Part shown: in pieces, positions 2,950 through 64,000 of the stretch
Numbering within the stretch: position 1 is the stretch's first letter
Layout of the letters: each line of letters starts with the position of its first letter
Assembly (NCBI RefSeq): GCF_006345805.1
Contig: NC_043012.1
Span: 29,388,001-29,452,000, forward strand
DNA from: Octopus sinensis
Lineage: Eukaryota
DNA: 64,000 nucleotides
Direction: 5' to 3'
Notes under the pieces: generated by a model
Database searches by the model: none
What the model was told of the DNA's origin: nothing
The model's input: the letters and a program-made list of their open reading frames with translations, nothing else
Made by a program: the position numbers and the translations under genes

Positions 2950-3325
2950 TCTTTCTATTTGTTTCGGTCATGCTGGGGCACTGCCTTCATGAATTTTAGT
3001 CGAACGAATCGACCCCAGTGCTTATTTTTTAGAGTCTGGTACTTATTATATAGGTCTCTTTTGCCGAACCCCTAAGTTATGGGGACGCAAACAAATCAAC
3101 ACACCGGTTGTCAAGCGGTGGTAGCAAACAAACACGGGCAAAAACACACACACATACATATATACTATGGGATTATTTCAGTTTCCGTCAATCGAATCCT
3201 TTCACAAAGTTTTGGTCAGCCTGAGGCTATGGTTGAGGACACTTGCCTAAGATATTGCGCTGTGGACTAAACAAGAAGCCCTGTGGTTGGGAAACAAATG
3301 TCTTACCACGCAGCCACGCCTCTGC
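2950..3325 (-). mobile_element. SINE family B (CORE-like tRNA SINE)
   Basis: Reverse-complement match to the copy at 24988-25342 (gcgtggctg head, gttcggcaaaaga, ggggtcgat, cagcatg tail). Confidence 0.7.
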
Positions 3326-13520: not shown

Positions 13521-14898
13521 TTTGTTCGCGCAGCTTTGGTTTAGGTCGTTTGTTTAACGTCACATATATCACTTTTGAACATCATTTCGTCATTTCGGCG
13601 ATTCCGTTTATGCTTTTTATTTTTCAAAAGAATTATGTTCATTTTATGTTTATATCATTTCTGAGTTACTGAGGAAGACTTGCTCGCTTATCTGGCACTT
13701 CAACGATGACCATTCGTTTTTTAATTTATTTTATTGAATATTTTAAAGATTAAATAATAGATTACATATGTCAAGCGAAAAAAGAACACGAGAGTCGATA
13801 TCTCTCTTTCTCCCTACGTATGTATGTATGTATGTATGTATGCGAAATGATCTGTCAAGGGACTCCCTCACTCTATTCTCTGCACATCATTAGCATAGAT
13901 ATTTCACAGATACACATATACACACGCGCACACATATATACACACATATACACACACGGACATATAGACACACAAGCATATATAATGTTTTATCCAAACG
14001 GGGTCTTGGAAAACGCAACATGTTATCAAATGGTTTGGGTGCAGTAGATTAGTTCCACATTCTGCTACTATACACGACGTAGTTTTACAATCTGCATAAC
14101 TGTAGAGAAGCAGAATCCGCGTGCGGTCTATAAAAAAAGAAAAGCTATAAAAGGTATTTATAAAAAAAGAAAAAAGAAACTTAATCGGTATATGAAAGAC
14201 ATGACCCTCTTCAACAGCATAATTAACAAAAGATACCTAATAATTGCAAATAATACTGATGAAGAGGACTAGATGTGTAACTGGGTCTTTCAGCAGTCGT
14301 AATTAATATCTACAAGTTTTCTCAAAGATGTGTACACTATACAAATCTTAAATACCCTTACATTTTCTGTGTTCCTCCTTTTTTTATGTATCATATATAT
14401 ACAAATAAGAAGATAATTTATTTTCAAACGCAGAAACGCTGATAGAACAGCAGAAATATTACGTAAATTACCATACAAAGCGGAAAAATTTGTCAACAAA
14501 CAATCATGGGAAACGAACCTATATCTTTTGAAGACTCCAGCCAAGTGCTTTATCATTAAGCTAAACAACTGATTAACAAATTAATCCGTAATTTTAAGCG
14601 GCATGAAGCTGAGAGTACAACTACGCGTATATAAATATAAACAGTCTAATATGGTTACTGGTCAACTAGTCTTGCCAAGCTGGCAGCATACAGGACACAA
14701 GTTGTGTGTCGTTAACCAGCCGGAAAAAGACCTTTTCCCTTCAGTTAAAATGAAGTAACATTCTTCTTTATAAGTACAGGCATATTATAATGGCAAAAAA
14801 ACGAAACAAAACAAAGAAAACAACAAAAACGTTAATGTCTCGTCTTGTTATCTCTTATATCTCATCTAGAGATTTTAGAACTAGCTATATATATTTAT

Positions 14899-15099
14899 TT
14901 CTTTTACTTGTTTCAGTCATTTGACTGTGGCCAAGCTGGAGCACCGCCTTTAGTCGAACAAATCGACCCCAGGGGTTATTCTTTGTAAGCCTACTACTTA
15001 TTCTATCGGTCTATTTTGCCGAACCATAAGTTAAAGGGACATAAACATCCCAGCATCGGTTGTCAAGCGATGTGGGGGGGGGAACACAGACACAAATAC
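14899..15099 (-). mobile_element. SINE family B 3' half
   Basis: Close reverse-complement match to the tail of family B copies. Confidence 0.75.
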
Positions 15100-15134
15100 A
15101 TACATATACATACATACATACATACATACATACA

Positions 15135-15168
<34 letters not shown>

Positions 15169-15190
15169 CATATATATGTATATATATATG

Positions 15191-15487: not shown

Positions 15488-16199
15488 GTAGCCAGCCAGT
15501 AGGTGTCGCTTCCGACAATCTCTGTTCGATGGTTTTATTTACCTAGTTTCGGTGGAATACATCCACTTGTTTTCAATAATAGAAATATTAAAATAACTAA
15601 GTCTCTCTAAAAGAGAACAGCTTTTTTCTTATTTTTATAAGAATGCCATATTAGTATGGCGATAACTATTATTTTCCGGGAACGCTGCCGCTGTTCTCTT
15701 TTAGAGACTGTTCTCTTTTAGAGACTGGTCACTTCATCTATTATCATTATTATTTTAGTGTCCTTTGTCTAAAACCTTTCGCGCGCACCCTGTGAGAATG
15801 GACTATACAGAACAGGAGGAGACAAGTGGGATGAAAGTCGCGGAAGAGGTCACAAGATGTGCGACGAAAGATTTCAGGCAAAGGATACTAAAATAATAAT
15901 AATATAATAATAATAATAATAATAATAATATAATAATAATAATAATAATGCTTAAGTGCAGAATGATAAGGAAAATGTAATTTTTTTTTCACATCCATAA
16001 TTTTATTTAACAGTTATTTACATCATCTTTACGAGACCTACACGTGTTTCCACTGCAGCGACTGCACGCTGTTGGATATGAAACTAGGTGTCATGGTCAG
16101 TGGAGTACGTGGACAAAACGGGTAACTTGCACCACTTAAGCCACTCTAATTACCATATATAATTAAAAATCAAATCACTAGAAACCATAAGGTAACAAA

Positions 16200-17900
16200 T
16201 CCGAATAACCAAACACAAATTAATTTACAAGCCAAAGCTATAATGGAAAGATATAGAGTAGAAGATAAAACAGAACCATACGAGCCTAAAACCACTAGGA
16301 TTAATCTTATGGACCACAAACCAAACTTTAACACTAACCCTATTGTTAGATTCATACGCCCCTCTAAATCGGACATAAGTAGGATAAATAAACATATAAT
16401 AGGTAAGTATATACCCACAGTAAGGAACATAAAGCTGAAACTCTGGTCTAGTTCTTACGAAGTTATTGACTGGATCATTAATATCCTTAATAAAAACAGA
16501 GCACGATTAATGCAAGTTGATATTACTAACTATTACTCCTCCATTAACCCTATCCTCATCTTTGCTAGAAATAACTAGAGAAGAGATAGATGTTATCTTA
16601 GTAGCTAGAAAATCAGTTATCTGGGTGAGAAAAGATTGGCCGATGTTCGACATTACTATGAGATCAACAAACTCCGCGCTATTTATCATAAACAAAGAAT
16701 TCCTTGAAATAGGAGGGGCTCTATGCAAGAAGAACCTGGGACTGTCCATATCAATAAAGGAGGAACATAACTCTGTCAACTTTCTTGATGTTACTTTAGA
16801 TTTAAATGCTGGAATATATAAACTTTATCACAAGCGAAACACGAACATTAGATGCATAAATAAAAATAGCAATCACTCTAGATGTATAACCCAATCAATA
16901 GTAGAGAACGTATCTACCCGTATTTCTAACCTGTCAGCGAACGAAGAAAATTTTAAACTAAACGAGGGCTTTTTTGATTTAGCACTGGAAAAGACAGGAT
17001 ATAGGGTAAAATTAAAATTCTACAATAACAACGATAGAATAAATAAATGTAGTAACAAGGACAATCATAACAATAATCGCAGTATACAAAATAACTGAAA
17101 AAAAGTGATTAATAGCCAAATAAGGACAAAGGGTAGAGTTAAGGGCAAGAAATTTGAACACTGGGAAAATAACCGTAGAATACCAACTAATGAGAAGGTG
17201 GGAAGGGATCTTAAAGAATTAGTATCGCACAAAGGTACAATAAACTCAGTAATTGAAACATTATACCAGGGAAATAGGTTAAACACGTTTACTATGACCT
17301 TAACTTAAACTACAGGCAACCATACCAAAAAGTGACTAACTCAAACGTGAGACTAGGAAGTGAAGACAAGAACGCTAGAAAGTGAAATCCGGAATGTCAA
17401 CAACGGGAAAAGAAGAAATAAACTAGAAAGTAGACAAAATAAGTTAGAGATTACCTCTAATGAAACCAACATAGAAATTAATAACAGAATAAGAAGAATT
17501 AATATCTGTGATTGCGCAAGGAACAGACAATGTCCTTTAAATTTCGAATGTAAGACTAAAAATGTGGTTTACATGTGCAAAGTTACCTCAGGAGACAAAG
17601 AGTATTTCTATATAGGTGCTAGCTCACGTTTTATTAAACAAAGAATAGATGAGCATGAAAATTCTTACAGATATAGGAAAAAAAAACAACACTAGCCTGA
17701 GTAAATTAATTTGGTCACTGAAAAATAGTAACAAGATATACTCAATAGGCTGGAATATTATCAGTAAGGCTAAACCTTATAGAATAGGGGATAAAAGATG
17801 CGACTTTTGCTTAAGGGAAATGTACTAAATTTTCACTTTAAATTTAACATAATATACACAAGGCAAGAACGTACTCTAAGATGCCTTTATACAAGAAAAT
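16200..17900 (+). mobile_element. Penelope-like element remnant (RT plus GIY-YIG), catalytic RT segment deleted
   Basis: FIRPSKSDISRINKHI, VNFLDVTLDL, CKTKNVVYMCKV...YFYIGASSRFIKQRIDEH, and hand-translated GWNIISKAKPYRIGDKRCDFCLRE at ~17750-17820; no YxDD motif seen. Confidence 0.85.
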
Positions 17901-18135: not shown

Positions 18136-18795
18136 GAGTGAGCCCTCGTTTATCACGGTAGATTGGTTCCGAGACCGGCCACGATAACTGAATTTCCGAG
18201 AAGTAGGGACACCGTATTTATAGTATTTATTTAACGTGTATTTGGACTTTTAAAACCCCCCCTGTACTGTTAACAACCCACCCATTACAGTAGTCTATTA
18301 ATTACAAGGACAGCTGTTAAGCAATAACACTTTCTCCAGGGATACAGGCATCCAGCAGCAGGACCTCCGTAATGCCATGATGGACCGTGAAGTCTGGCGT
18401 AGCATGGTAAATTCCATTGTCTCGACCACGGTCGAACAATGATGATGATGATGATAACACTTTAGATTTAAAAAAATAAAGTTTGTTATTGTACTCAACA
18501 CGAAAGAAGTTGAAGTAAAATTTGAATGATGATGATGATGATGATGATGAAGTTGACGGCGGCGCCCTTTCCTGGGACACCTCTTCCAACCGTAGTAGTA
18601 GCAGCAGGAACTAGCTCTTTTTGCGAGGCTGCTTCTTTTTCCGTTCAAAAAGCATCTTGTAGGAATTCATGACTTTGTCGACCTTGTTGCAAAATTGCAC
18701 AGAACGAACCATATCGTCGTCCCATTCCTGTGACCCTTCTTTCAATTCTTTAACCAGGTTGCAGCCGTTCCAAAGTCAAGCCAGTTTGGTCGACA
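18136..18795 (-). mobile_element. Tigger/pogo-type DNA transposon 3' remnant, interrupted by an RTE fragment
   Basis: TA + gagtgagccctcgtttatcacgg TIR-like end; minus-strand translation LWNGCNLVKELKEGSQEWDDDMVRSVQFCNKVDKVMNSYKMLFERKKKQ resembles a Tigger transposase C-terminus. Confidence 0.6.
18300..18455 (+). mobile_element. RTE-like LINE 3' end
   Basis: RDTGIQQQDLRNAMMDREVWRSMVNSIVSTTVEQ* followed by a (TGA)n tail. Confidence 0.65.
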
Positions 18796-18805
18796 ACTTC
18801 TTCCG

Positions 18806-18938
18806 CTTCTTCTTCTTCTTCTTCTTCTTCTTCTTCTTCTTCTTCTTCTTCTTCTTCTTCTTCTTCTTCTTCTTCTTCTTCTTCTTCTTCTTCTTCTTCT
18901 TCTTCTTCTTCTTCTTCTTCTTCTTCTTCTTCTTCTTC
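18806..18938. repeat. Pure (CTT)n, ~44 units
   Basis: Directly visible. Confidence 0.95.
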
Positions 18939-18939
18939 A

Positions 18940-19400
18940 CGAAAACGGTATATGCCCCCTATACCGCAACAAGTTCTGGAATAGGTTGGAGAGGGACACC
19001 GACAAAAGAAATAAAAACAATACTTGGTATGATAACAAGAAGTTTCGCAGTGTACTGTTTGTTGATGCTACACCTAAGAACGAATTAAGTAAGGCATTCA
19101 AGAAAATCCTGCGCACAACTGGCCTTAATAACAAAGTTGTAGAAAAGACAGGTTGGAATATCAAATCTGTATTAAGTAGATCATATTCATTTGATAGAAT
19201 CACATGTCAGAATAATAGTGCAGTATGTTCTACAAACCCACATGTGAACTGCAAAACCAAGAGCACTGTACACCAGATTAAGTGCCAAGAAGGAGCTTGC
19301 GCAATTATCCCAGAGTCATATATTGGTGAGACTTCTAGGAGCATCAATGATAGGTTCAAAGAACACCCGAACAACCACATTGAAAAAAAACACCAAACTC
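18940..19400 (+). mobile_element. Second Penelope-like GIY-YIG endonuclease fragment
   Basis: ORF 18986-19480: SVLFVDATPKNEL...NCKTKSTVHQIKC...SYIGETSRSINDRFKEH. Confidence 0.8.
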
Positions 19401-21599
19401 CATCTTCTATCAGCATTCTGGATATTCATGTGCTTGCATGTCTGTGTTTGTGTATTTTCTATGTATGTATGTGTGTGTGAGCGTGTGTTTGCATATGTAT
19501 GCACATCTGTCTCCTGGTGTGTGCATGTCTATGTGTGTGTATGTGTGTGTGTGTTTTGCAACTATGTACCATATGTGCCCTTGTGTGGAGTAAAGTGTGT
19601 GCGTATATATATGGTCATGTGTTTCAGTATTCTTTGTAAACGAGGAACTAAGATGCCATACTGGTGTCGTTGTCGAATCCTTGACTTCAGCAATCTTCCA
19701 AGAGAATGTTGTTTTTAGTCAATATTTTTTACTGAATATTTCTTGGATTATTTTTTCCTCAAACAGTTTCCAAAACAGAAATTTCAGAAATTTCTCTTGA
19801 ATCATAAACTCAAAATTTATACATTGAAGATGATGTATAATAAATGTGCCCCATTTTAATAAATACAGAACCAAGTATTGCATCAACTATTATTGAATAG
19901 TATTTTGCTTTTGATCTTCCAGAAAGTGTTTCAAAACAGTGTAGGGGCAAAAAGAAATCAATTCATTTAGTGAATTAGCTGCATGGTTCTCTTTTTTTCC
20001 CAGATTTCTTTGATCTTCCCGACATGGTTTCAAATAGGGATCCTTGTCTAAACAAAAGATCAACCAATCCAAGGAAGCTACCACTGTAAACATAATCAAT
20101 AAAGTAAGAGGTGCCACAGAATATTAACTGACCTTCATCTAAAGAGGAAATAATGTTAATTGGACAGAGTAAAATAGTACTCCTTAGCCTCTTATACATC
20201 AATTTGTCTATGGAGAAAATCTTCAGTGCTTGGGCGAATCCTTTATTCGAGCTCTTTCCATAAAAGACAATTCAATTTATATTGGTTACTACGGTCATGT
20301 TTAGGAAATTTGTCCCAATTTTCTCCGTTCTTCTCTGATAGGTAATCCATTCTATATTGACAAAGCAAACTCTTTGGTAAGGAACACAGCCTTTTCTAAA
20401 GATTTGATACAATAAAGAAAACATAGCTTGTTTCTTTACACTGACCGATATCTTTAAGACATTTCTATTTTGTAATTCCCGTTCATTAAATAAAGATATT
20501 CACGATGCTTAGAAATGTTTGGGATAGGGTTCATGCAAATATTTTGCAATGTTTCTTGCACTTCTTTGTATTATATTTCCAATATCAAATCTATCCTATA
20601 TGTTATTGGAGTGTTCTTTCCTATAGTTTGGGTTTAAGTTAGTGGTATTCTATTCGCTTACAAGTGTGATCTCTTGGGTATTGTAGGTGATTTATGTTTA
20701 ACAATGTCACTCTATGCTTCAGATGAAGTCTTTTAGTTTTCAGTTTGTTATTGAGCAGAGAATTCAGTTTCTGCTGATAAATACTTATGCGTTAGCTTTT
20801 TGGAAGTAATATTCATGTCCAGTAATAACCTCTTTCCTTTGTGTTCTTATACTTCTCTTTCAGTTCTCTTTTTGCTCTCTAGATTTCTGCTTATGCTTTG
20901 CAATAATAAGATAGAAACATATGTAGGAAATTAAAAGTGTGCTTTTTGAGATAACAGCTACGTTGATTTATATTTTCTTTTCTGTTTATTTCCCACGTAC
21001 CAACAAAATAAGAATACTCTTCCGATTTGGCTTACAGAATAATGCAGTAATAATTGTATATGCATGGCATGAAAACGAGATACAACAGGTTTCAGAATAT
21101 TTCATTTTTTTTAATATACATATAACATCAATCAAAGCAAGTTTTATATCAATGTATTTATGAATGTACATATGTATATTAATATGTCGATTAATTAATA
21201 CGTTATAGAAAACACTAGTCGATATTTATGTAATTTGCATAGTCAGTGATATAATTTGTTTTGTAAGAAAAGCATTATCAAAATCAGTTATGAGGAAAGA
21301 CAAAAGGCAGTTTTGGGGTTCACTCGATTAGGACATGCCTCACATTAAAAATCTGCTGTGAAAGTTCAATGTCGAAGGCAATAATTTGAAGTTGTTTTCC
21401 AATTAACGTTTCGTTGTAGCTTCACATGAGTACCAGCGGATCATAGAACAGAAACTGAAGAAAACAAAGATATATACGCATTTTTAAACTTGATGTGGCC
21501 AAAAGGTTCCAAATCTATTACAACATCTATTACAGTTTGAATCATGAGTTGATTCTGTTCTGTTGCGTTACTTCGTGTTGTCTATATAATAAAGGACTC

Positions 21600-24987: not shown

Positions 24988-25342
24988 GCAGGCGTGGCTG
25001 CGTGAGAAGAAGCTTGCTTCCCAACCACATGGTGCCGGGTATTCCACTGCGTGGCCCCTTGGCGATGTGTCTTCTGTAAACTCGTGCCAACCAAAGCCTT
25101 GTGTGTGTGTGTGTCTTTGATCTGTGTTTCACCCCCACCACAGTTTGACAGTCTGTGTTGGTGTATTGACGTCCCTCGTAACCTAGCGGTTCGGCAAAAG
25201 ATCCCGCTAGAATAGGTACCTGGGTTAAAAGGAGAAAAAATATTAAGTGCTGGGCTCGATACATTTGCCTAAAACTTCTTCAAGGCGATGCCTCAACATG
25301 GTAGCAGTCAAATGACTGAAACAAGGAAAGGATAAATAAAGA
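24988..25342 (+). mobile_element. SINE family B (CORE-like), near full length
   Basis: gcaggcgtggctgcgtgagaagaagcttgcttcccaacc tRNA-like head, ccttggcgatgtgtcttct CORE-like segment, conserved tail. Confidence 0.8.
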
Positions 25343-32477: not shown

Positions 32478-34092
32478 CAGTGGCGGCCAAAAGGTTCAGA
32501 ACAGCATTGTTTTCGTCAGAAAAGTAGATATAATTTTTTATCAAAGTTGTTTTATATTCTATAATTTTCACAGACAATAAATACGATATTATTTATTATT
32601 GCCTGAGATTTTGGTGTAATTTGAGAGCATAATACAAAAGTTATGGATGATTTAGTGATTTACTGCAAAACCCATGGCGGCCAAAATGATCAGAACGGTT
32701 GCTTTTACTCCGTGTTTTAGTATACTCTAATGTTTTGAATTTGTTTACGTGACGGTTAATTTACTAAACATTAGTAAAAATATTTGCAGTGTACTTTGTT
32801 AATATAATGCCACTTACTCCGTTACCAGTTCGTCAGCAGATTATTAAGCTTCGAAGGAAGGATAATTTAAGTATTGGATCTATTGCAAAGATTGTTAACA
32901 AGTCAAAAGTGTTGTACACGGTATTCTTAAGGTCTACGATGATTGTGGTTCGTGTGAATCAAGAAAGTTTACAGGTAGGCCAAGAAAAACGACCAAGAGA
33001 GAAGATCGTGCTATGGTAAAGTTGATTAAAAAGGACAGATTTAAAACTGCTGCTGCTGTTTTCTCGGAAAATGAGCATTGTATGAAGAAAACTTTATCTC
33101 GAAAAAACTGTGTCTCGTCGTTTAGTTGAACATGACCTACAAGCAAGAGCACCTGCAGTGAAGCCACTGATCAGCTCCAAGAATAAAAAGTGTCGTCTTA
33201 CCTTTACAACCAAACATGTGTTGTGGTCTCAAGAAAAATGGCAAACGGTGCATTTCAGTGATGAATCTAAGTTTATGTTATTTGGCTCAGATGGGAAAAG
33301 GTACGTTCGTAGAAAAGTAGGTGAAAAATTGTCGCCTAAATGCCTTAAGACTAGTGTTAAATTCGGTGGAGGAAGTGTCATGGTTTGGGGTATGATATCT
33401 GAAGATGGTGTGGGCCCTTTGGTGCTATTACATGGAAAGGTAAATGCAGGAGTTTATAAGCAACTTGTAAAAGATCATGTCTTGCCTGTGTTGAGAAATT
33501 CAACTAAGCGACCACCTATATTCATGCAGGACAATGCCCCATGTCACAAGGCTAAGGTGATCATGAACTTCCTTAAGGCTGAAAAGGTTATTGTTATGGA
33601 TTGGCCTGCTCAAAGCCCAGATCTCAATCCTATTGAAAATGTATGGAATATTCTAGGAGAACGTTCGAAAGCCAGAAATCCTAAAACAACTGAGCAATTA
33701 TGGAATGCCCTTCAGGAAGAATGGAATAAGATCACCCAGCAAGAAATTGAAAATTTAATTTCCTCATGCAGTCAAAGATGTCAGAGTGTGATTGAAGCTA
33801 AAGGGCTTCACACTAAATATTAAATAATTCCAGTATTCTCTGTCATTTTTAATTATTTTGTTATTTTTTCAACCGTTCTGATCATTTTGGCCGCCATGGG
33901 TTTTGCAGGAAATCACTAAATCATCCATAACTTTTGTATTATCCTCTCAAATTACACCAAAATCTCAGACAATAACAATTAATATTGTATTTATTGTCTG
34001 TGAAATTATAGAATATAAAACTACTTTGATAAAAACTTATACTTGCTTTTCTGACGAAAACAATGCTGTTCTGAACATTTTTGCCGCAACTG
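32478..34092 (+). mobile_element. Full-length Tc1 transposon (DD34E) with long IR/DR termini
   Basis: TA TSDs at 32476-32477 and 34093-34094; ~224-bp TIRs (32478-32701, 33870-34092), each with two tggcggccaaaa..cagaac repeats. Confidence 0.97.
32807..33823 (+). pseudogene. Tc1 transposase, two frameshifts in the N-terminal third, catalytic domain open
   Basis: MPLTPLPVRQQII...; GRPRKTTKREDR in a shifted frame; FSDESKF, QDNAPCH and WPAQSPDLNPIEN with exactly 34 residues between D and E. Confidence 0.9.
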
Positions 34093-38184: not shown

Positions 38185-38201
38185 AATAATAATATAATAA
38201 T

Positions 38202-38233
<32 letters not shown>

Positions 38234-38238
38234 TAATA

Positions 38239-38300
<62 letters not shown>

Positions 38301-38365
38301 TAATAATAATAATAATAATAAGAATAATAATAATAATAAAAATAATTAAAATAATAATAATAATA

Positions 38366-38426
<61 letters not shown>

Positions 38427-38496
38427 TAATAATACAAAAATAATAATAATAATAATAATAAAATAATAATAAAAAATAATAATAATTATAAATAAA

Positions 38497-38530
<34 letters not shown>

Positions 38531-38534
38531 TAAA

Positions 38535-38600
<66 letters not shown>

Positions 38601-38602
38601 TA

Positions 38603-38636
<34 letters not shown>

Positions 38637-38722
38637 TAAAAAATAATAATAATAATAATAATAATGATAATAATAATAATAAAAAATTAATAATATAATA
38701 ATAATAAAATAATAAAAAATAA

Positions 38723-38795
<73 letters not shown>

Positions 38796-39082
38796 TAATA
38801 ATAATAATAATAAAATAATAATAAAATAATAATAATAATAAAATAATAATAATAATAAAATATTAATAATAATAATAATAATAAAAAATTAATAATAATA
38901 ATAATAATAATAATAAGAATAATAATAATAAAATAATAATTAATAATACTAATAAAAAATAATAATAATAATAATATAATAAAAAATAATAATAATAATA
39001 ATAATAATAATATATAATAATAATAATAATAATAAAAATAATAATAATATAATAATAATAATAAAATAATAATAATAATAAT

Positions 39083-39113
<31 letters not shown>

Positions 39114-39119
39114 TAATAA

Positions 39120-39160
<41 letters not shown>

Positions 39161-39164
39161 TAAA

Positions 39165-39211
<47 letters not shown>

Positions 39212-39236
39212 GAATAATAATAATAATAATAATAAA
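38185..39236. repeat. ~1.05-kb imperfect (AAT)n array
   Basis: Directly visible. Confidence 0.95.
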
Positions 39237-39824
39237 AATGCCCTGATGCAGTACCATGCCCTGATGCAGTAAATGCCCTGATGCAGTACCAGGCAGTGGC
39301 TCTCATGGCTTCTGATCTTAACTGATTGGAAGTGTTATCATGTACATTGTTTTGTCTTGGTATAAAAGATGGGCTACAGCAAATATTCTGCTCAATACCA
39401 CAGATTGCTTGTCAGTTGTTTGACCTTAACCAGTTGAGCATGTCCCTTAGTGGCTGACGATATGTGCATCTCTGATCACGAGCAGAAGTAGTGGGGGAGC
39501 ATCATAGCCATGTGTTGAAATGGATGCTGGGGGTTTGAATAGTTCACCTCTGGAAACATGGGTGGTTCTTTCAACATCCTTAAACAACCCTTATTCGGGG
39601 ACCGTTGAGCGGGATGGGCTACTCAACCTGAAGAAAATTCAAACTGGGCCCCACCTGCAAGGTCATGTGCTGTTTATCTTGATATGAGATCACCATGTCG
39701 CGCACATATGGTGTGATGCATGTGCCTGGTGTACCTTTATCAGACGGGTAGTCAAGATGGGTATATTGGGCTTCGTATATTTTACCCCAGTGTCACTTTG
39801 ATGGCATGAACTGCTCTCTCACTC
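39237..39824 (+). mobile_element. ~590-bp apparently non-coding element embedded in (AAT)n
   Basis: Sharp junctions with AAT repeats on both sides; no long ORF; starts with three copies of tgccctgatgcagta. Orientation inferred by analogy to the Dong fragments. Confidence 0.5.

Positions 39825-42283: not shown

Positions 42284-42288
<5 letters not shown>
41791..42288 (-). mobile_element. R4/Dong-type 3' fragment with 3' UTR
   Basis: MTVPIDINVSVKTYQKLSKYKDLEIEISKMWKLKTKTIPVVIGALG; abuts (ATT)n on both sides. Confidence 0.9.
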
Positions 42289-42359
<71 letters not shown>

Positions 42360-42491
42360 ATTATTATTATTATATTATATTATTATATTATTATTAATTA
42401 TTATATTATATCATTATTATTATTATATTAATTATTACTATTATTATTATTATCATCATCATCTTCATCATCATCATCATTATTATTATTA

Positions 42492-42531
<40 letters not shown>

Positions 42532-42599
42532 GTATTAATATTAATTATTATATTATTATTATTATTATTATATTAATTATTATATTATTATTATTAGTA

Positions 42600-42647
<48 letters not shown>

Positions 42648-42818
42648 TTATTATTATTATTATTATTATATTATTATTATTATAATTATTATTATTATAT
42701 CATTATTATTATTATTATAATTATTACTATTATTATTATTATTATCATCATCTCTTCATCATCATCATCATCATATTATTAATTATTAATTATTATTATT
42801 ATTATTATTAATATTAAT

Positions 42819-42850
<32 letters not shown>

Positions 42851-42919
42851 ATTATTATTATTATTATTAGTAATTATTATTATTATTATTATTATTATTG
42901 TTATTATTATTAATTATTA

Positions 42920-43002
<83 letters not shown>
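42289..43002. repeat. Imperfect (ATT)n array; related arrays at 40598-40787 and 41625-41790
   Basis: Directly visible. Confidence 0.95.
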
Positions 43003-50179: not shown

Positions 50180-50644
<465 letters not shown>

Positions 50645-56484: not shown

Positions 56485-56942
56485 GGCTGGTCTGTAGTTA
56501 CGTCTCGTTATTTACTTCCTCGAGTGAAGCGCCGCCTAGGAACAACTGTATAACCACACCACGCCTTTCTGTCCTCTCTCTCTCCTCTCTCTCTTTGCTT
56601 TTCTCTCCGTCCCCTCCTCTCATTCCATTCAGTTACGCTACCATCAACCTTACTGCAATCACGGAATAACAACACCAACTGTGCCCAATAACGACAACAA
56701 GACAATATTTTATCTTTCCCTTTTCCTCCCACACTTTGTGCCATTCAACTCTTCTTCAAAACTAAAAAAGGCAAAAAATTCAAGTTTGCTCGGAACATTT
56801 TGGATTTTAGTACCAAAGAAGCGAAGTCGATTGACGAAAAAGCGCCACCACGGCAAAATCTTCATCAAGTTCGGATCACGGTGTCTCTGGCTTTCCGCCG
56901 CTAAGTAGACGCCTCGTCCCACGACGCGGATGGAGAAACAGC
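56485..56942 (+). promoter_or_regulatory. Candidate promoter/5' UTR of the downstream first exon
   Basis: Unique, relatively CpG-rich DNA between repeat blocks; ttacgtc and acttcc motifs near 56500-56520. Confidence 0.35.
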
Positions 56943-57004
56943 ATGACTCCCTTATGGCTGCTGCTGCTCGTATGCACCTTTCACACCGTGCATGCATCTT
57001 GGTG
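56943..57004 (+). CDS. First coding exon of a secreted protein, possibly Wnt family (MTPLWLLLLVCTFHTVHA-SW-W|intron)
   Basis: ATG, hydrophobic core and VHA cleavage-like motif, then SW with a GTACGT donor at 57005 splitting the second Trp codon (phase 2), as in exon 1 of WNT2/WNT3A-type genes. No exon 2 found in the window. Confidence 0.5.
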
Positions 57005-57229
57005 GTACGTACATTATTTGTTGCATAATTGTTTTTTATTCGTTTCACCATTATACCTGCCTACACACATACTTACCTACCTACATGTGTGTGTGTGTAA
57101 ACACACACACCCACACATAAACATTCACTCTCTCACACACACATACACACACACACATATATATATATGCACACACACATATATATACACACACAATCAA
57201 TATGTACATTCAGATATACATATATACTA

Positions 57230-57230
57230 C

Positions 57231-57315
<85 letters not shown>
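57230..57315. repeat. (ATCT)n
   Basis: Directly visible. Confidence 0.95.
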
Positions 57316-57382
57316 GTTTGCTAGCTAGCTGTGTGTGTGTGTGTATGTGTGAGCGCGCGCGGGTATGTGTGTGGAGATAGAC

Positions 57383-57482
57383 NNNNNNNNNNNNNNNNNN
57401 NNNNNNNNNNNNNNNNNNNNNNNNNNNNNNNNNNNNNNNNNNNNNNNNNNNNNNNNNNNNNNNNNNNNNNNNNNNNNNNNNN
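57383..57482. other. Assembly gap (100 N)
   Basis: Run of N. Confidence 1.
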
Positions 57483-57788
57483 AAATAGGAGAAAATTTAA
57501 AACATTTACCCTGTAATTTCTTGTACGATGCACCGTTTCGTCTGTTGTTTATGGTAAACTAACCTGATTAAATTAAATCAAGCCAATCTTCCATAGGCCC
57601 TCAGATTCTTCAGCAAGAATAGCCAAGTCGGAACAGATATTTTCACGAGGCATTTCCGACCCTGCCAAGGCGATATCTGACCTAAATTTTTCAATCGTCG
57701 CGCACTCGCGCCAATTTATCAGCAGCAAATAAATAACCGTCGATTCCATTACGGAATTAACCAGAAAATTCATAATTAATCAATATAG
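57483..57788 (-). repeat. Inverted partial unit of the ~495-bp array, containing a minus-strand hammerhead (57516-57620)
   Basis: Reverse complement of the array unit, with a few single-base indels. Confidence 0.9.
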
Positions 57789-58267
57789 AATCTGAGGGCC
57801 TATGGAAGATTGGCTTGATTTAATTTAATCAGGTTAGTTTACCATTAAACAACAGACGAAACGGTGCATCGTACAAGAAATTACAGGGTAAATGTTTTTT
57901 TAAATTTTCTCCTGTTTACGGAATTGATCTTTATTTGCGGTTGAAGCTTTGGCTGTTATTTCTAGTGGGTGAATGGCCTATTATGGCCGTTCCTTGATTG
58001 TTGATGTTGAACTGTAAAAATGGTCTACGACTATTTAATTTTTTCCCACTAGGCCGCTGGTGGCAAAAAGAATTCTACAAAATTTTTTTCACCACCCTAT
58101 ATTGATTAATTATGAATTTTCTGGTTAATTCCGTAATGGAATCGACGGCTTATATTTATTTGCTGCCGATAAATTTGGCGCGAGTGCGACGATTTGAAAA
58201 TTTTAGGTCAGATATCGCCTTGGCAGGGTCGGAAATGCCTCGTGAAAATATCTGTTCCGACTTGGCT

Positions 58268-58374
58268 ATTTCTTGCTGAAGAATCTGAGGGCCTATGGAA
58301 GATTGGCTTGATTTAATTTAATCAGGTTAGTTTACCATTAAACAACAGACGAAACGGTGCATCGTACAAGAAAT
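58268..58374 (+). ncRNA. Type I hammerhead ribozyme, best copy
   Basis: atttcttg-CUGAAGA-[68 nt, tctg/caga base]-GAAA-cgg tgca tcg-UA-caagaaat; perfect 8-bp stem I, GUA triplet at 58364-58366. Confidence 0.8.
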
Positions 58375-58757
58375 TACAGGGTAAATGTTTTTTTAAATTT
58401 TCTCCTGTTTACGGAATTGATCTTTATTTGCGGTTGAAGCTTTGGCTGTTATTTCTAGTGGGTGAATGGCCTATTATGGCCGTTCCTGATTGTTGATGTT
58501 GAACTTAAAAATGGTCTACGACTATTTAATTTTTTCCCACTAGGCCGCTGGTGGCAAAAAGAATTCTACAAAATTTTTTTCACCACCCTATATGATTAAT
58601 TATGAATTTTCTGGTTAATTCCGTAATGGAATCGACGGCTTATATTTATTTGCTGCCGATAAATTTGGCGCGAGTGCGACGATTTGAAAATTTTAGGTCA
58701 GATATCGCCGTGGCAGGGTCGGAAATGCCTCGTGAAAATATCTGTTCCGACTTGGCT

Positions 58758-58863
58758 ATTTCTTGCTGAAGAATCTGAGGGCCTATGGAAGATTGGCTTG
58801 ATTTAATTTAATCAGGTTAGTTTACCATTAACACAAGACGAAACGGTGCATCGTACAAGAAAT
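58758..58863 (+). ncRNA. Type I hammerhead ribozyme copy
   Basis: Same core; stem II 3' side is variant (caagac); GUA at 58853-58855. Confidence 0.7.
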
Positions 58864-59248
58864 TACAGGGTAAATGTTTTTTTAAATTTCCTCCTGTTTA
58901 CGGAATTGATCTTTATTTGCGGTTGAAGCTTTGGCTGTTATTTCTAGTGGGTGAATGGCCTATTATGGCCGTTCCTTGATTGTTGATATTGAACTTAAAA
59001 ATGGTCTACGACTATTTAATTTTTTCCCACTAGGCCGCTGGTGGCAAAAAGAATTCTACAAAATTTTTTTCACCACCCTATATTGATTAATTATGAATTT
59101 TCTGGTTAATTCTGTAATGGAATCGACGGCTTATATTTATTTGCTGCCGATAAATTTGGCGCGAGTGCGACGATTTGAAAATTTTAGGTCAGATATCGCC
59201 TTGGCAGGGTCGGAAATGCCTCGTGAAAATATCTGTTCCGACTTGGCT

Positions 59249-59354
59249 ATTTCTGCTGAAGAATCTGAGGGCCTATGGAAGATTGGCTTGATTTAATTTA
59301 ATCAGGTTAGTTTACCATTAAACAACAGACGAAACGGTGCATCGTACAAGAAAT
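59249..59354 (+). ncRNA. Type I hammerhead ribozyme copy
   Basis: Same core; one T missing in the stem I 5' strand; GUA at 59344-59346. Confidence 0.7.
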
Positions 59355-59749
59355 TACAGGGTAAATGTTTTTTTAAATTTTTTTAAATTTTCTCCTGTTT
59401 ACGGAATTGATCTTTATTTGCGGTTGAATCTTTGGCTGTTATTTCTAGTGGGTGAATGGCCTATTATGGCCGTTCCTTGATTGTTGATGTTGAACTTAAA
59501 AATGGTCTACGACTATTTAATTTTTTCCCACTAGGCCGCTGGTGGCAAAAAGAATTCTACAAAATTTTTTTCACCACCCTATATTGATTAATTATGAATT
59601 TTCTGGTTAATTCTGTAATGGAATCGACGGCTTATATTTATTTGCTGCCGATAAATTTGGCGCGAGTGCGACGATTTGAAAATTTTAGGTCAGATATCGC
59701 CTTGGCAGGGTCGGAAATGCCTCGTGAAAATATCTGTTCCGACTTGGCT

Positions 59750-59855
59750 ATTTCTTGCTGAAGAATCTGAGGGCCTATGGAAGATTGGCTTGATTTAATT
59801 TAATCAGGTTAGTTTACCATTAAACAACAGACGAAACGGTGCATCGTACAAGAAT
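59750..59855 (+). ncRNA. Type I hammerhead ribozyme copy
   Basis: Same core; one A missing in the stem I 3' strand; GUA at 59846-59848. Confidence 0.7.
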
Positions 59856-60092
59856 TACAGGGTAAATGTTTTTTTAAATTTTTTTAAATTTTCTCCTGTT
59901 TACGGAATTGATCTTTATTTGCGGTTGAAGCTTTGGCTGTTATTTCTAGTGGGTGAATGGCCTATTATGGCCGTTCCTTGATTGTTGATGTTGAACTTAA
60001 AAATGGTCTACGACTATTTAATTTTTTCCCACTAGGCCGCTGGTGGCAAAAAGAATTCTACAAAATTTTTTTCACCACCCTATATTGATTAA

Positions 60093-60151
<59 letters not shown>

Positions 60152-60186
60152 GTATGTGCGTGTGTGTGTGTGTACGTGTATGAGTA

Positions 60187-60299
60187 AGGCGTAGGCTTGG
60201 CTTTATGGTAAGAAGTTTGCTTCCCAAACACGACTTCCTGAATGGATTTGGTAAACAGAAACTGAAAGAAGCCCGTTGTATAAATACATACATGCATAC

Positions 60300-60342
<43 letters not shown>

Positions 60343-60515
60343 AGTGTGTCTTTGTGTTTGTCCCCCACCACTGCTTAACAACCGGGGCTGGTGTGTTTAC
60401 GTCTCCGTAACATACCGGTTCGGCAAAAGAGGCCGATAGAATAAGTACGAGGCTTAAAGAAATAAGTAGCGTGGTCGATTCGTTCAAGCATGGCCGAAGC
60501 AAGTAAAAGAATAAA
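60187..60515 (+). mobile_element. SINE family B
   Basis: ggtaagaagtttgcttcccaa head, gaaactgaaagaagccc, gttcggcaaaagaggccgatagaataagtac. Confidence 0.8.
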
Positions 60516-61299: not shown

Positions 61300-64000
61300 T
61301 TGGTCATTTTGTACGTTCAAAAGTGTTTATTGTTAAATATTTTGTGTTTAAAAGTTGTGCAACAACATCCACTGCAAACCTTGACTAATATCTTCACAAA
61401 ATTTCGCCCTTTGTGGGCAAAATTTTAAAAAATTCTCGTAGGCCTCGTGTTGTATTTTAGCCATTTTTATTTTCAAAAATGGCTACTGGTCACCACGAGG
61501 CTGAGGCGCAACTGAAGCGTGACGCCAAAACAAAAAAGCAAGATTTCCTGTCACCACGCGCTGAACTTGACTGTTTGAACGCTACATACACCACCACCAC
61601 CACCACCACCATCAGCATCGACAACAGCAACAACTACAAAACAAAGGCCACAAAGCCAAGCACCGTCACCGCCACCAATGATTCCACCATCAACACCGAT
61701 ACCACCACCATGGCAGCTTCTGCTACCACAACTGCTACCTCTGCTAACAACAACAATAACAATACCAAGATCGCCGCCACCAAAGACCGTGCGGTCAATA
61801 CGAATGCCGCCACTACAATATCTGCTACTACGACTGCCTCCTTTGCTACTAACACCACCACCGCCACCAAGAACGACAATAACAACAACAACAACAATTC
61901 CCTTCAGCCATTGTTCCCTCTACCACCAAGTGAAGGAGAGAAAGAAATTGCCGAAACTTGCTCAAACGCAGGGGCAAATTATGCAGAAAATTTTCCACCC
62001 CTTGCTAATTGCATAATCAGCAACCATGCACCTAATATATCCACAACCACCACCTCCACCACCACCTCCAACATAAATGATAAAAATGAAAATAACGCAA
62101 ATACAATTAACAAAGACAACAACAACAACAAGAACAACAACAAAAATGAAATAAATATTTTACCATCAAATGGTGAAGATATTATCATAACAGATTCAAC
62201 AATACCTGGAAAAACCACGTGCAAGAATATTTCGGATACAACAACAACACAAACACACAAAGACAACAACTGCCAGAATGTAAAAGTAAATTTCGCTGAC
62301 ACTCTGCGTCAGAAAAAAGAAATTATACAGTTCACGAATGAAGAGTTGATAGAGACAAGATCACTCTTCACAACCCAAGGGCAAGATTTAGTATTGCATA
62401 CATCTCAACACATAAAGGAACAAATAGAAAACCAATTATATATAAAATTTTTAAAAAACCCAAATAACAAAATGAACAGATCACAAAAACGGACATAGAA
62501 AAGTGTGCAAAAAGCATAATGAAAGTAAAAGAATATATAAACTGGGGTCCCCAGTTTAATACAGTGGTGGTCCGCTTCCCTAACCAGGAAGTGGCAAAAG
62601 CTCACTCTACCGAGTCTTTGGAAAATGATGAAATCATCATGGTACCATACTACAAGGCCAGAGAGTGAGTAAAATTACTATTAAAAATGTAGCCCCCCCC
62701 CCCGAGATTCCTAACAAATGGATAACAGGGGCAATCTGTTACCATTTGAAAACTATAAATATTTTAAAGACTGCCGTATACCTAAACGATAATTTGGGGT
62801 GGAAAAACAATAGTAGTAACCATCCAGATTGAGGGGGCCTCTATCGAGAACCTACCTGATAGGATCCACTTAGAAAATGGGCAAAGCCTATATGTTGTAG
62901 CAGAAGGCAAAAAGCCTAGATGCTACAACTGTGGCAGCCCAGAACATTTAATTGCCAAGTGCGTTCTGGTACAGAGAAAACAAGAAAGAACAAATCAGAA
63001 AACAAACAAAAAACCTTTGTTGCCAACACCAACACCACACTCAATGATGGAACAATGCCAAGAAAAGACAACAAACCAGCAAACAAACCTCAACAACATC
63101 ACCAAGAAAAGAAACAGCACCAACACAATCAGCGTTGACGTCGCAACCAATTCAACATACTGAAACAACACCAAAAGATAGACCAACACAAGCACCAAGG
63201 ACGACAACAAAAAAACCCCCAAAAAACAGTGACGAGAAGACAAATTCTACCCCTAACACCCCAACAACACAAACACCGCACAAAACATCAACAATTTCTA
63301 CAAACATACATATTAACGCAAATGCTTTGCCTTTACCCCCTTCTGATTTGTCGGACGACGAAAGTTCGACAGAATGGCAAATAGCCACAGGGGGTAAAAG
63401 AAAAAGATAAAAAAACAAACAAACAAGAAAGCGCAACCAAAGCAGGGAGATACCTGAATCCTGAAAGCTCCACACACAACCAAACAAGCACCAACACCAC
63501 AAAAACACACACAATGCTATCAGCGATAGACACCAAAGACTCCAAACTAATGGAGTACATCACAGCCCACACAAACATCTGTGAAGATGACTTCAAAACT
63601 AACAACCATCCACGCACTACACCACCCAAACAATCAAAATACTACACATCACACAAACACAACACCACACAATCAAAGCCCTCTTTCCAAATGCGGTTGG
63701 GGGGTTCCAAAAATACCTGTCACAAAAACTCTATAAAAACCTCCAAGACACATCAAAGGACGAGGAAGCCAAAACTTTCGACACAAGTAAGTAACTCTCT
63801 GTACCTTCCTTTCTGTGTTTTAAAGCACATACCCCAATAAGATCATGGTCAAGATTGGTTGTGTGAATGCGCGTGGCTTGGGGTCTCCTTGGAAGAAAGG
63901 ATACCTCCTAAATGACATCAAGTCACACGATTTGGGAATCATAGCCATAAGTGAGACCAGACTCAACGAGCCACGGGCTCTAAAGTCCATGTTTGGCGGA
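61300..64000 (+). mobile_element. L1/Tx1-clade LINE 5' part: ORF1 (from 61479, frameshifted) and start of ORF2
   Basis: 339-aa open N/T-rich ORF1 start; perfect CX2CX4HX4C knuckle CYNCGSPEHLIAKC at 62921-62962; same architecture as the copy at 43443. Confidence 0.9.
63845..64000 (+). CDS. LINE ORF2 N-terminus (APE endonuclease), runs off the window
   Basis: MVKIGCVNARGLGSPWKKGYLLNDIKSHDLGIIAISETRL, with the NxRGL and xETxL APE motifs. Confidence 0.85.
   Translation, partial: MVKIGCVNARGLGSPWKKGYLLNDIKSHDLGIIAISETRLNEPRALKSMFGG

What the first reader, a model, noticed from the sequence alone, without database searches (positions are those of the whole stretch)
56943..60092. Self-cleaving array in sense orientation within intron 1 of the putative Wnt-like gene
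Seen: four complete hammerheads lie on the same strand as the candidate exon, the first ~1.3 kb downstream of the donor. Inference: host pre-mRNA transcription could release ~495-nt monomers or circles, and co-transcriptional cleavage could dampen or gate expression of a developmental ligand, analogous to intronic ribozymes such as CPEB3. Caveat: a 100-N gap separates exon and array.
Basis: inference. Interest (0 to 1): 0.7.

Follow-up and report, generated by a model that had tools for sequence, protein, structure and literature searches.

The report
Hammerhead-ribozyme tandem repeat (animal retrozyme)
This is a short tandem array of a ~490-base repeat that carries a hammerhead self-cleaving RNA motif in each unit, which is the known signature of animal "retrozyme" mobile elements; nothing shows that it sits in, or regulates, a Wnt gene.

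Summary
Window 57789-60092 (+) is about 4.7 units of a 489-502 nt repeat, 97-99 % identical. Four units carry a complete type I hammerhead motif; none appeared in 200 shuffles of the window.

- A head-to-head inverted, 5'-truncated copy (57483-57788, minus strand) starts right after the N gap and has its own complete hammerhead.
- Every copy has an A10.1·C11.1 mismatch at the most conserved helix II pair, and helix II is 68 nt long. Rfam scores are therefore 18.7-22.7 bits against a gathering score of 34.
- Two of the four plus-strand motifs have weakened stems.

Low GC, no coding capacity, a strongly self-paired monomer, a palindromic helix III, a 3' end on an (AT)n microsatellite and the tandem-plus-inverted layout all match metazoan non-LTR retrozymes, which Penelope-like elements are thought to mobilise.

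The "Wnt intron 1" frame rests on 21 codons plus a GT donor. No Wnt-domain exon lies in the window and no database protein shares the peptide. A strong out-of-frame ATG lies 13 nt upstream. The gap hides the join.

Verdict: a new member of a known kind, activity untested, host-gene regulation unsupported.

The parts
56943..57005 (+). Candidate first coding exon: 21 codons, signal-peptide-like, followed by GTACGT at 57006-57011. Unverified; not shown to belong to the repeat or to a Wnt gene.
   Evidence: Translation. No Pfam match and no database protein sharing words. An out-of-frame ATG at 56930 in a strong context gives a 32-aa ORF.
57383..57482 (.). Assembly gap (100 N). It hides the outer end of the inverted repeat copy and the upstream insertion junction.
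   Evidence: The flanks share no overlap, and only microsatellites lie to the left.
57483..57788 (-). Inverted, 5'-truncated repeat copy, joined head-to-head to the direct array. It covers monomer positions ~226-493 plus 1-~45 and runs into the gap.
   Evidence: Inverted-repeat pairs I1-I15, alignment A1, and 95.6 % identity to the monomer.
57518..57619 (-). Complete hammerhead motif on the minus strand. Predicted cleavage between 57524 and 57523. Stem I is 6 bp.
   Evidence: Rfam Hammerhead_1 18.7 bits and a descriptor hit.
57789..60092 (+). Direct tandem array of about 4.7 units of 489-502 nt. It starts inside a hammerhead, just after the CUGAAGA box, and ends at ...CTATATTGATTAA against (AT)n.
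57789..57880 (+). Truncated hammerhead. It lacks the 5' arm of stem I and the CUGAAGA box. The cleavage-site half is present (GUA|C after 57873).
58270..58372 (+). Hammerhead copy 1, consensus form. Stem I is 8 bp, helix II is a 68-nt hairpin, stem III is 3-4 bp with a UGCA loop. Cleavage after 58366.
58760..58861 (+). Hammerhead copy 2. The core is complete. The 3' strand of helix II is altered (AACACAAGAC), which leaves 3 bp at its base. Cleavage after 58855.
   Evidence: Rfam 22.7 bits. It fails my descriptor. Alignment columns 478-484.
59250..59352 (+). Hammerhead copy 3. The core is complete. A 1-nt deletion in the 5' arm of stem I (ATTTCTG) leaves a bulged A in stem I. Cleavage after 59346.
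   Evidence: Not listed by Rfam at E<=10. Found by the descriptor only when one stem I mismatch is allowed. Alignment column 411.
59752..59854 (+). Hammerhead copy 4. Core and helix II are consensus. A 1-nt deletion in the 3' arm of stem I (CAAGAATT) leaves 6 bp intact. Cleavage after 59848.
60093..60155 (.). (AT)n microsatellite abutting the 3' end of the array; the probable insertion target.
   Evidence: TRF row 60093-60155 and the sequence itself. PLE-type elements favour (TA)n targets (PMC8557442).

Best explanation
The feature is one insertion of a non-autonomous retroelement of the metazoan 'non-LTR retrozyme' kind. These are short, AT-rich, non-coding tandem repeats in which every unit carries a type I hammerhead ribozyme.

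Inferred mechanism, by analogy with characterised members: a multimeric transcript of the + strand folds a hammerhead in each unit and cuts after GUA. Cutting may use a two-unit (dimeric) hammerhead, because helix III is short and self-complementary. The ~490-nt monomers carry 5'-OH and 2',3'-cyclic phosphate ends and are circularised by the RtcB tRNA ligase. The highly base-paired circles are then copied into DNA and inserted by the reverse transcriptase and GIY-YIG endonuclease of a Penelope-like element. This gives tandem units, a 5'-truncated inverted copy and a microsatellite target.

Shown here: the repeat, the motif, its non-chance occurrence, the architecture and the composition.

Inferred only: cleavage, circularisation, mobilisation by PLEs, and any transcription at all.

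The element is most likely selfish, or already decaying, and is not a regulator of a neighbouring gene.
For: - Type I hammerhead core and helices are present in five copies, and shuffles give none.
- The tandem units are 489-502 nt and 97-99 % identical.
- GC is 36.9 %, below the <45-50 % described for the class (PMC7229834).
- ORFs are 67 aa or shorter and have no homologue.
- Predicted circular monomers fold to -131 to -137 kcal/mol, z -2.9 to -4.6 against shuffles.
- The helix III segment ACGGUGCAUCGU is self-complementary: the dimer duplex is -19.5 kcal/mol against -1.7 for the hairpin. This matches the palindromic helix III of animal and PLE hammerheads (PMC4209133).
- The head-to-head inverted 5'-truncated copy, the tandem units and the (AT)n at the 3' end match the insertion architecture drawn for PLEs (PMC8557442).
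- The inversion junction is asymmetric (monomer position ~226 against ~421), so it is not a perfect fold-back artefact.
- A degraded RT + GIY-YIG element lies in the same window at ~16.1-17.7 kb.
Against: - The 10.1-11.1 pair, the most conserved pair after 15.1-16.1 (PMC3088659), is an A·C mismatch in every copy.
- Helix II is 68 nt instead of about 4 bp plus a loop, so the canonical loop1-loop2 contacts cannot be recognised.
- Rfam scores stay below the gathering score.
- There is no covariation evidence, because all copies are near-identical.
- Only one locus is visible, so dispersal in the genome, target-site duplications and expression are untested.
- No related sequence was found in metagenome or viral contigs.
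- The unit length of ~490 nt is slightly above the 150-450 bp usually quoted.
- Variants are shared by adjacent units: a 10-nt duplication in units 4 and 5, and a C/T difference at alignment column 269. This points to some DNA-level expansion, or to a multimeric template, not to a single rolling-circle copy.
- No hammerhead lies next to the PLE remnant in the window.
Confidence: 0.75

Rival explanations
1. The array lies in sense orientation in intron 1 of a Wnt-like gene. Co-transcriptional hammerhead cleavage of the pre-mRNA releases monomers or circles and dampens or gates expression of the ligand.
For: A signal-peptide-like 21-codon ORF with a consensus-like GTACGT donor lies on the same strand as four of the motifs. 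The exon region is unique within the window. Intronic sense hammerheads with proposed roles exist in amniotes, in RECK and C10orf118 (PMC3088659, PMC2933863).
Against: There is no Wnt-domain exon in the window. The peptide has no Pfam match and no database protein shares it. An out-of-frame ATG in a strong context lies 13 nt upstream. The sequence downstream of the array is a LINE-like element, not an exon. The gap makes adjacency and orientation unknown. The array is a young multi-copy repeat, unlike the conserved single-copy intronic ribozymes. Retrozymes are often intronic with no known effect (10.64898/2026.07.22.740005). From general knowledge, not checked here: slow ribozyme cleavage inside an intron need not prevent splicing.
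Confidence: 0.06
2. A catalytically dead satellite. The repeat descends from a hammerhead-bearing element, but the A10.1·C11.1 mismatch and the long helix II insertion have abolished cleavage. The array grew by unequal crossing-over or slippage at the DNA level.
For: The mismatch at the most conserved stem pair is present in all copies. Variants are shared by neighbouring units. Scores are below the Rfam threshold. Only one locus is seen.
Against: All 11 strictly conserved core positions, A15.1-U16.1 and a permitted H17 are intact in five copies. There are no substitutions in the core, although substitutions occur elsewhere in the unit. A natural retrozyme hammerhead with a U·U mismatch at the same position still cleaves, 22 %/h as a monomer and much better as a dimer (PMC7229834). 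The 3' end on (AT)n and the inverted 5'-truncated copy look like retrotransposition, not slippage.
Confidence: 0.17
3. Assembly artefact. The copy number, the inversion and/or the position of the array next to the exon were produced by assembly or scaffolding of a repeat.
For: The contig starts inside a repeat unit right at the gap. Any transcript or single strand across 57490-57910 forms a ~120-bp near-perfect hairpin (-228 kcal/mol, z -26), the type of structure that breaks assemblies. Most differences between units are 1-nt indels in homopolymer runs, as expected from long-read consensus errors.
Against: The inversion junction is asymmetric, and the inverted copy differs from the direct copies at several positions (95.6 % identity). 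It is therefore not a simple fold-back chimera. The units carry distinct substitutions, so they are not one collapsed copy.
Confidence: 0.15

Closest known systems
Metazoan non-LTR retrozymes (Cervera & de la Pena 2020, PMC7229834; Li et al. 2026 preprint 10.64898/2026.07.22.740005)
   Same: Tandem units of a few hundred nt, each with a type I hammerhead. Low GC, no ORF, no LTR/PBS/PPT, and strongly self-paired monomers. They occur in molluscs and many other phyla and are linked to Penelope-like elements.
   Different: The unit is ~490 nt, at or above the upper end of the quoted 150-450 bp. Helix II is a 68-nt compound hairpin instead of ~4 bp plus a loop. The 10.1-11.1 pair is an A·C mismatch. 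Expression, circles and genome-wide copies were not examined.
pDo500 satellite of Dolichopoda cave crickets, newt satellite 2 and Schistosoma Sm-alpha (PMC2837043)
   Same: Satellite repeats with one hammerhead per unit (about 500 bp in pDo500 by its name; not read in the paper) whose multimeric transcripts self-cleave into monomers. A single or a double-hammerhead mode is possible.
   Different: Those hammerheads are compact (49 nt in pDo500), keep G10.1-C11.1 or compensate it, and are conserved across species. Here the motif spans 103 nt and conservation could not be tested.
Minimal hammerheads in the pseudo-LTRs of Penelope-like elements (PMC4209133, PMC8557442)
   Same: A palindromic helix III that suggests dimeric action, a longer-than-usual helix II with irregularities at its 5' base, tandem plus inverted 5'-truncated insertion architecture, and microsatellite targets.
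   Different: No RT/EN ORF lies between the repeats here. Helix I is long (8 bp) and helix III is a real 3-4 bp stem, unlike the minimal motifs. The PLE remnant in this window carries no detectable hammerhead.
Conserved intronic ribozymes (HDV-like in CPEB3; hammerheads in RECK and C10orf118; PMC3088659, PMC2933863)
   Same: A self-cleaving motif that may be in sense orientation within an intron.
   Different: Those are single-copy and conserved over long evolutionary distances. This is a multi-copy, near-identical repeat of transposon type, and its intronic status is unproven.

Membership tests
Hammerhead ribozyme, type I (Rfam RF00163) | Conserved core: C3-U4-G5-A6-N7-G8-A9, G12-A13-A14, A15.1-U16.1, and H17 (not G) at the cleavage site | tested here: met
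   CUGAAGA ... GAAA ... U-A|C is present in four + copies and one - copy.
Hammerhead ribozyme, type I (Rfam RF00163) | Three helices around the core, with helix I open-ended | tested here: met
   The minimum-energy fold of the isolated region gives stem I (8 bp), helix II and stem III. The descriptor hits only in the array and never in 200 shuffles.
Hammerhead ribozyme, type I (Rfam RF00163) | Watson-Crick pair at 10.1-11.1 (normally G-C) | tested here: not met
   A10.1·C11.1 in all copies, flagged as non-canonical in the Rfam alignment. Natural U·U exceptions exist (PMC3088659, PMC7229834).
Hammerhead ribozyme, type I (Rfam RF00163) | Score at or above the curated Rfam gathering score | tested here: not met
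   No match at the gathering score. Scores are 18.7-22.7 bits against 34, penalised by the ~55-nt insertion in helix II.
Hammerhead ribozyme, type I (Rfam RF00163) | Compensatory changes that support the helices | not testable with these tools
   The only copies available are 95-99 % identical. No relatives were found in the searchable collections.
Hammerhead ribozyme, type I (Rfam RF00163) | Site-specific self-cleavage | not testable with these tools
   Requires transcription and cleavage assays.
Metazoan non-LTR retrozyme | Short tandem repeats (about 150-450 bp), each unit with a type I hammerhead | tested here: met
   About 4.7 direct units of 489-502 nt, slightly above the quoted range, plus one inverted partial unit.
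Metazoan non-LTR retrozyme | Low GC (<45-50 %), non-coding, no LTR/PBS/PPT | tested here: met
   GC is 36.9 %. The longest ORF is 67 aa with no homologue. The units are simple head-to-tail copies with no terminal repeats.
Metazoan non-LTR retrozyme | The monomer folds into a highly self-paired (circular) RNA | tested here: met
   Circular minimum-energy folds of -131 to -137 kcal/mol, z -2.9 to -4.6 against shuffles. This is a prediction only.
Metazoan non-LTR retrozyme | Expressed as linear and circular monomer RNA | not testable with these tools
   No transcriptome of the source organism is available.
Metazoan non-LTR retrozyme | Many dispersed loci in the genome, with insertion signatures | tested here: inconclusive
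   There is one locus in 64 kb. The 3' end lies on (AT)n and an inverted 5'-truncated copy fits PLE-type insertion. The upstream junction and any target-site duplication are hidden by the gap.
Metazoan non-LTR retrozyme | Co-occurrence with Penelope-like elements in the same genome | tested here: met
   Window 16511-17095 aligns to the RT part of P0145 (E 4e-15), and 17357-17692 aligns to the GIY-YIG part of P0145 and its relatives (best E 3.5e-16). P0001 passes the Pfam GIY-YIG cutoff. The element is degraded, and its link to this repeat is not shown.
Functional intronic ribozyme (CPEB3 / RECK type) | Lies within an intron of a transcribed gene, in sense orientation | tested here: inconclusive
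   The exon is a 21-codon prediction, and a gap of unknown size and orientation intervenes.
Functional intronic ribozyme (CPEB3 / RECK type) | Single-copy motif conserved across species | tested here: not met
   This is a multi-copy, near-identical tandem repeat. Cross-species conservation could not be tested.
Wnt gene | Exons that encode the Wnt domain (PF00110) | tested here: not met
The peptide has no Pfam match. Later exons could lie beyond the window.

The most novel reading that the evidence does not exclude
The 103-nt motif is an active, previously undescribed hammerhead variant: A·C at 10.1/11.1 and a 68-nt compound helix II that could act as a regulatory or protein-binding arm. The array also truly sits in sense orientation in the first intron of a secreted-ligand gene, so that host transcription feeds circRNA production and cleavage, or the 120-bp dsRNA hairpin, modulates that gene.
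Probability: 0.05. Interest if true: 0.6.

Novelty: new member of a known kind. Interest (0 to 1): 0.25.

Why it matters
If it is active, this adds a member with an unusually large helix II and a non-canonical 10.1-11.1 pair to the retrozyme and hammerhead repertoire. It would be a natural test of how far the hammerhead scaffold tolerates such changes. Otherwise it is an ordinary repeat insertion. The practical lesson for the scan is that tandem hammerhead arrays in animal DNA should first be read as retrozymes. Their position near a short exon-like ORF, across an assembly gap, is not evidence of gene regulation.

Tried and rejected
- Rfam at gathering scores over the whole window found nothing. 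The whole-window E-value scan was swamped by microsatellite-driven miRNA-model hits.
- TRF did not report the ~490-nt period. The array was defined with the repeat finder, blastn and MAFFT instead.
It was replaced by a regex and tblastn search for Wnt hallmarks, which was negative.
- Attempts to reach other copies or assemblies all failed: exact look-ups of two transposon ORFs and two repeat-encoded ORFs found nothing on record; a homology search with the 67-aa repeat ORF found nothing; exact DNA scans of metagenome and viral contigs found nothing.
- The homology search with the RT-like ORF gave nothing at E<=1e-3. The exhaustive representative search with the GIY-YIG ORF did work.
- The source organism could not be identified. 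The closest relatives of the GIY-YIG ORF are unnamed Logan/ENA contigs.
- A perfect fold-back chimera was considered as the origin of the inversion and rejected, because the junction is asymmetric and the arms differ.
- An alternative core register using the second CUGAGGG was considered and rejected, because it lacks G8-A9.
Full report
**1. What is in the sequence**

Between 57483 and 60092 the window holds a repeat with a unit of about 490 nt.

- The direct part (57789-60092, + strand) has about 4.7 units. Measured between predicted cleavage sites, the full units are 493, 489, 491 and 502 nt long. They are 97.4-99 % identical.
- Pairs of full units differ by 2-6 substitutions and 2-4 indel events. 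Most single-base indels fall in homopolymer runs, so some may be assembly errors.
- TRF missed this period. The repeat finder, blastn and MAFFT define it.

**2. The hammerhead motif**

Each complete unit contains, in order:

- stem I 5' arm AUUUCUUG
- CUGAAGA
- a 68-nt helix II
- GAAA
- stem III CGG-UGCA-UCG
- U-A, then the cleavage site
- stem I 3' arm CAAGAAAU

This is the type I hammerhead topology. Three results support it:

- The isolated 121-nt region adopts exactly this three-way junction as its minimum-energy fold (-30.5 kcal/mol, z -2.95).
- A 23-nt part of it occurs five times exactly. Shuffles gave no match.
- A relaxed structural descriptor hits only inside the array. It found nothing in 200 dinucleotide shuffles of the 64-kb window, both strands.

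**3.

- Rfam reports nothing at gathering scores. With permissive settings, Hammerhead_1 matches at 18.7-22.7 bits against a cutoff of 34, because of the ~55-nt insertion in helix II and a non-canonical pair.
- That pair is 10.1-11.1, the most conserved stem pair of the ribozyme after 15.1-16.1 (PMC3088659). It is A·C in every copy. A natural precedent exists: the axolotl retrozyme motif HHR_Amex2 has U·U there and still cleaves 22 %/h as a monomer, and much better as a dimer (PMC7229834). A·C itself has not been tested, as far as I could find.
- Canonical metazoan type I motifs have helix I of 6 bp, helix II of 4 bp and helix III of 1-2 bp with a palindromic loop (PMC4209133). Here helix II has 4 bp, then a large internal loop, then an 18-bp interrupted hairpin. 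The usual loop-loop contacts cannot be recognised.
- The helix III segment ACGGUGCAUCGU is fully self-complementary. The predicted dimer duplex is -19.5 kcal/mol against -1.7 for the hairpin. A double-hammerhead mode, as in newt, cricket and PLE motifs, is therefore plausible.
- Status of each copy:
  - 58270 is the consensus form.
  - 59752 keeps 6 bp of stem I.
  - 58760 has a weakened helix II base.
  - 59250 has a bulge in stem I.
  - The first plus-strand copy (57789-57880) lacks the CUGAAGA box.

**4. The inverted copy and the gap**

- Right after the N run, 57483-57788 is a copy of the unit on the minus strand (95.6 % identity). It carries its own complete hammerhead at 57518-57619.
- It is joined head-to-head to the direct array. 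In monomer coordinates the inverted copy starts at about 226 and the direct array at about 421. The junction is therefore asymmetric and is not a simple fold-back chimera.
- The inverted copy runs off into the gap. The gap therefore hides the rest of the element and the upstream insertion junction.
- Left of the gap there are only (ATCT)n and (TG)n-type microsatellites. There is no repeat sequence and no overlap with the right flank.
- I could not establish continuity, distance or relative orientation across 57383-57482. That question stays open.
- If the right-hand contig were flipped, the single minus-strand motif would become the sense one. 'Sense orientation' is therefore not a robust property.
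- Any transcript across 57490-57910 would form a ~120-bp near-perfect hairpin (-228 kcal/mol, z -26).

**5. What it is**

The features fit the metazoan non-LTR retrozymes described by Cervera and de la Pena (PMC7229834) and tied to Penelope-like elements in a 2026 preprint (10.64898/2026.07.22.740005):

- tandem units, each with a type I hammerhead
- GC of 36.9 %
- no ORF above 67 aa, and no homologue for the longest one
- predicted circular monomers that are much more stable than shuffles
- a 3' end (...CTATATTGATTAA) directly on an (AT)n microsatellite
- tandem units next to an inverted 5'-truncated copy

The last two points are the architecture and target preference described for PLE insertions (PMC8557442).

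A degraded RT + GIY-YIG element lies in the same window. ORF 16511-17095 aligns with the RT part of a 473-aa protein (P0145; E 4e-15, with the motif C region deleted). ORF 17357-17692 aligns with the GIY-YIG part of that protein and its relatives (best E 3.5e-16; the closest relative, P0001, passes the Pfam GIY-YIG cutoff). No hammerhead was detected next to it, so a direct link is not shown.

Older names for the same type of element are hammerhead satellites, such as pDo500, newt satellite 2 and Sm-alpha (PMC2837043).

**6. How it probably works**

These steps are inferred from the characterised members, not shown here.

1. A multimeric plus-strand transcript is made.
2. The hammerheads cut it, perhaps acting in pairs.
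3. The monomers are ligated into circles by RtcB.
4. The circles, or multimers, are reverse-transcribed and inserted by PLE machinery.

Variants shared by adjacent units argue that the array was not made in one rolling-circle pass from a single circle. These are a 10-nt duplication in units 4 and 5, and a C/T difference at alignment column 269. A multimeric template or later DNA-level expansion is needed.

**7. The Wnt / intron 1 interpretation**

- The candidate exon is ATG at 56943 through TGG TGG at 57005, followed by GTACGT. It encodes MTPLWLLLLVCTFHTVHASWW, which looks like a signal peptide.
- From my own knowledge, several Wnt proteins have a WW shortly after the signal peptide, so the guess was reasonable. 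I treat that only as a lead.
- Tests gave no support:
  - No Pfam hit for the peptide.
  - No protein among 5.8 billion clusters shares three 5-mers with the ORF.
- An ATG 13 nt upstream (56930) has G at -3 and G at +4 and opens another frame of 32 codons.
- Downstream of the array come a SINE-like repeat and a LINE-like element (CCHC zinc-knuckle ORF; an endonuclease-like ORF start, judged by eye, at the window end), not an exon.
- Later exons could lie beyond 64000, so the gene model cannot be excluded.
- Even if the array is intronic, that is common for retrozymes: 43.9 % of Xenopus tropicalis copies are intronic, and they are depleted from introns relative to intergenic DNA (10.64898/2026.07.22.740005).
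- The conserved intronic ribozymes invoked as analogues are single-copy and deeply conserved, which this is not.

**8. Verdict**

This is a real, non-random hammerhead-bearing tandem repeat. It is best filed as a new member of the known animal retrozyme or hammerhead-satellite kind. It has an unusual long helix II and a non-canonical 10.1-11.1 pair, which leave catalytic competence open. The regulatory Wnt-intron reading is unsupported and, with this window alone, undecidable. The source organism was not identified.

Noticed in passing
window 16150-17692 (+) and 18734-19477 (+): Degraded retroelement with an RT-like ORF and a GIY-YIG endonuclease-like ORF in RT-then-EN order, as in Penelope-like elements. 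A second GIY-YIG-like ORF lies 1.3 kb further on (Pfam GIY-YIG E 0.008). No hammerhead was detected nearby.
   Followed up: partly
window 57490-57910: The inverted and direct repeat copies form a ~120-bp near-perfect hairpin with a ~177-nt loop (-228 kcal/mol, z -26). It is a potential dsRNA source and a likely cause of the assembly break.
   Followed up: yes
window 56930-57028 (+): An upstream ATG in a strong initiation context (G at -3, G at +4), 13 nt before the proposed start codon and out of frame with it. It gives a 32-codon ORF that overlaps the candidate exon.
   Followed up: partly
window 61479-64000 (+): LINE-like element: a 339-aa low-complexity ORF, then an ORF with a CCHC zinc knuckle (62786-63160, Pfam E 3.4e-4), then an ORF start at the window end that by eye resembles the start of a LINE endonuclease (no Pfam match).
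   Followed up: partly
window 60280-60486, with copies at 50371-50586, 14956-15170 (-), 3002-3149 (-) and 25100-25229: A dispersed ~200-nt SINE-like repeat, 73-76 % identical between copies. One copy lies just downstream of the array.
   Followed up: no
window 6046-7134 (-) and 33110-33823 (+): A mariner-type transposase remnant (Pfam Transposase_1 E 1.9e-18, HTH_48 E 5.5e-9). Separately, an uninterrupted 237-aa ORF that looks by eye like a Tc1 transposase; it was not tested against Pfam.
   Followed up: partly
window 14498-14570 (-): A tRNA model match just below the Rfam cutoff (28.4 against 29 bits). It could be a decayed tRNA gene or a tRNA-derived SINE head.
   Followed up: no
window 38185-39239 and 42288-43002: Very long trinucleotide arrays: (AAT)n of about 360 units and (TTA)n of about 238 units. 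The window gave 94 tandem-repeat rows (overlapping rows describe the same array). These microsatellites produce dozens of spurious miRNA-model hits in permissive Rfam scans.
   Followed up: no
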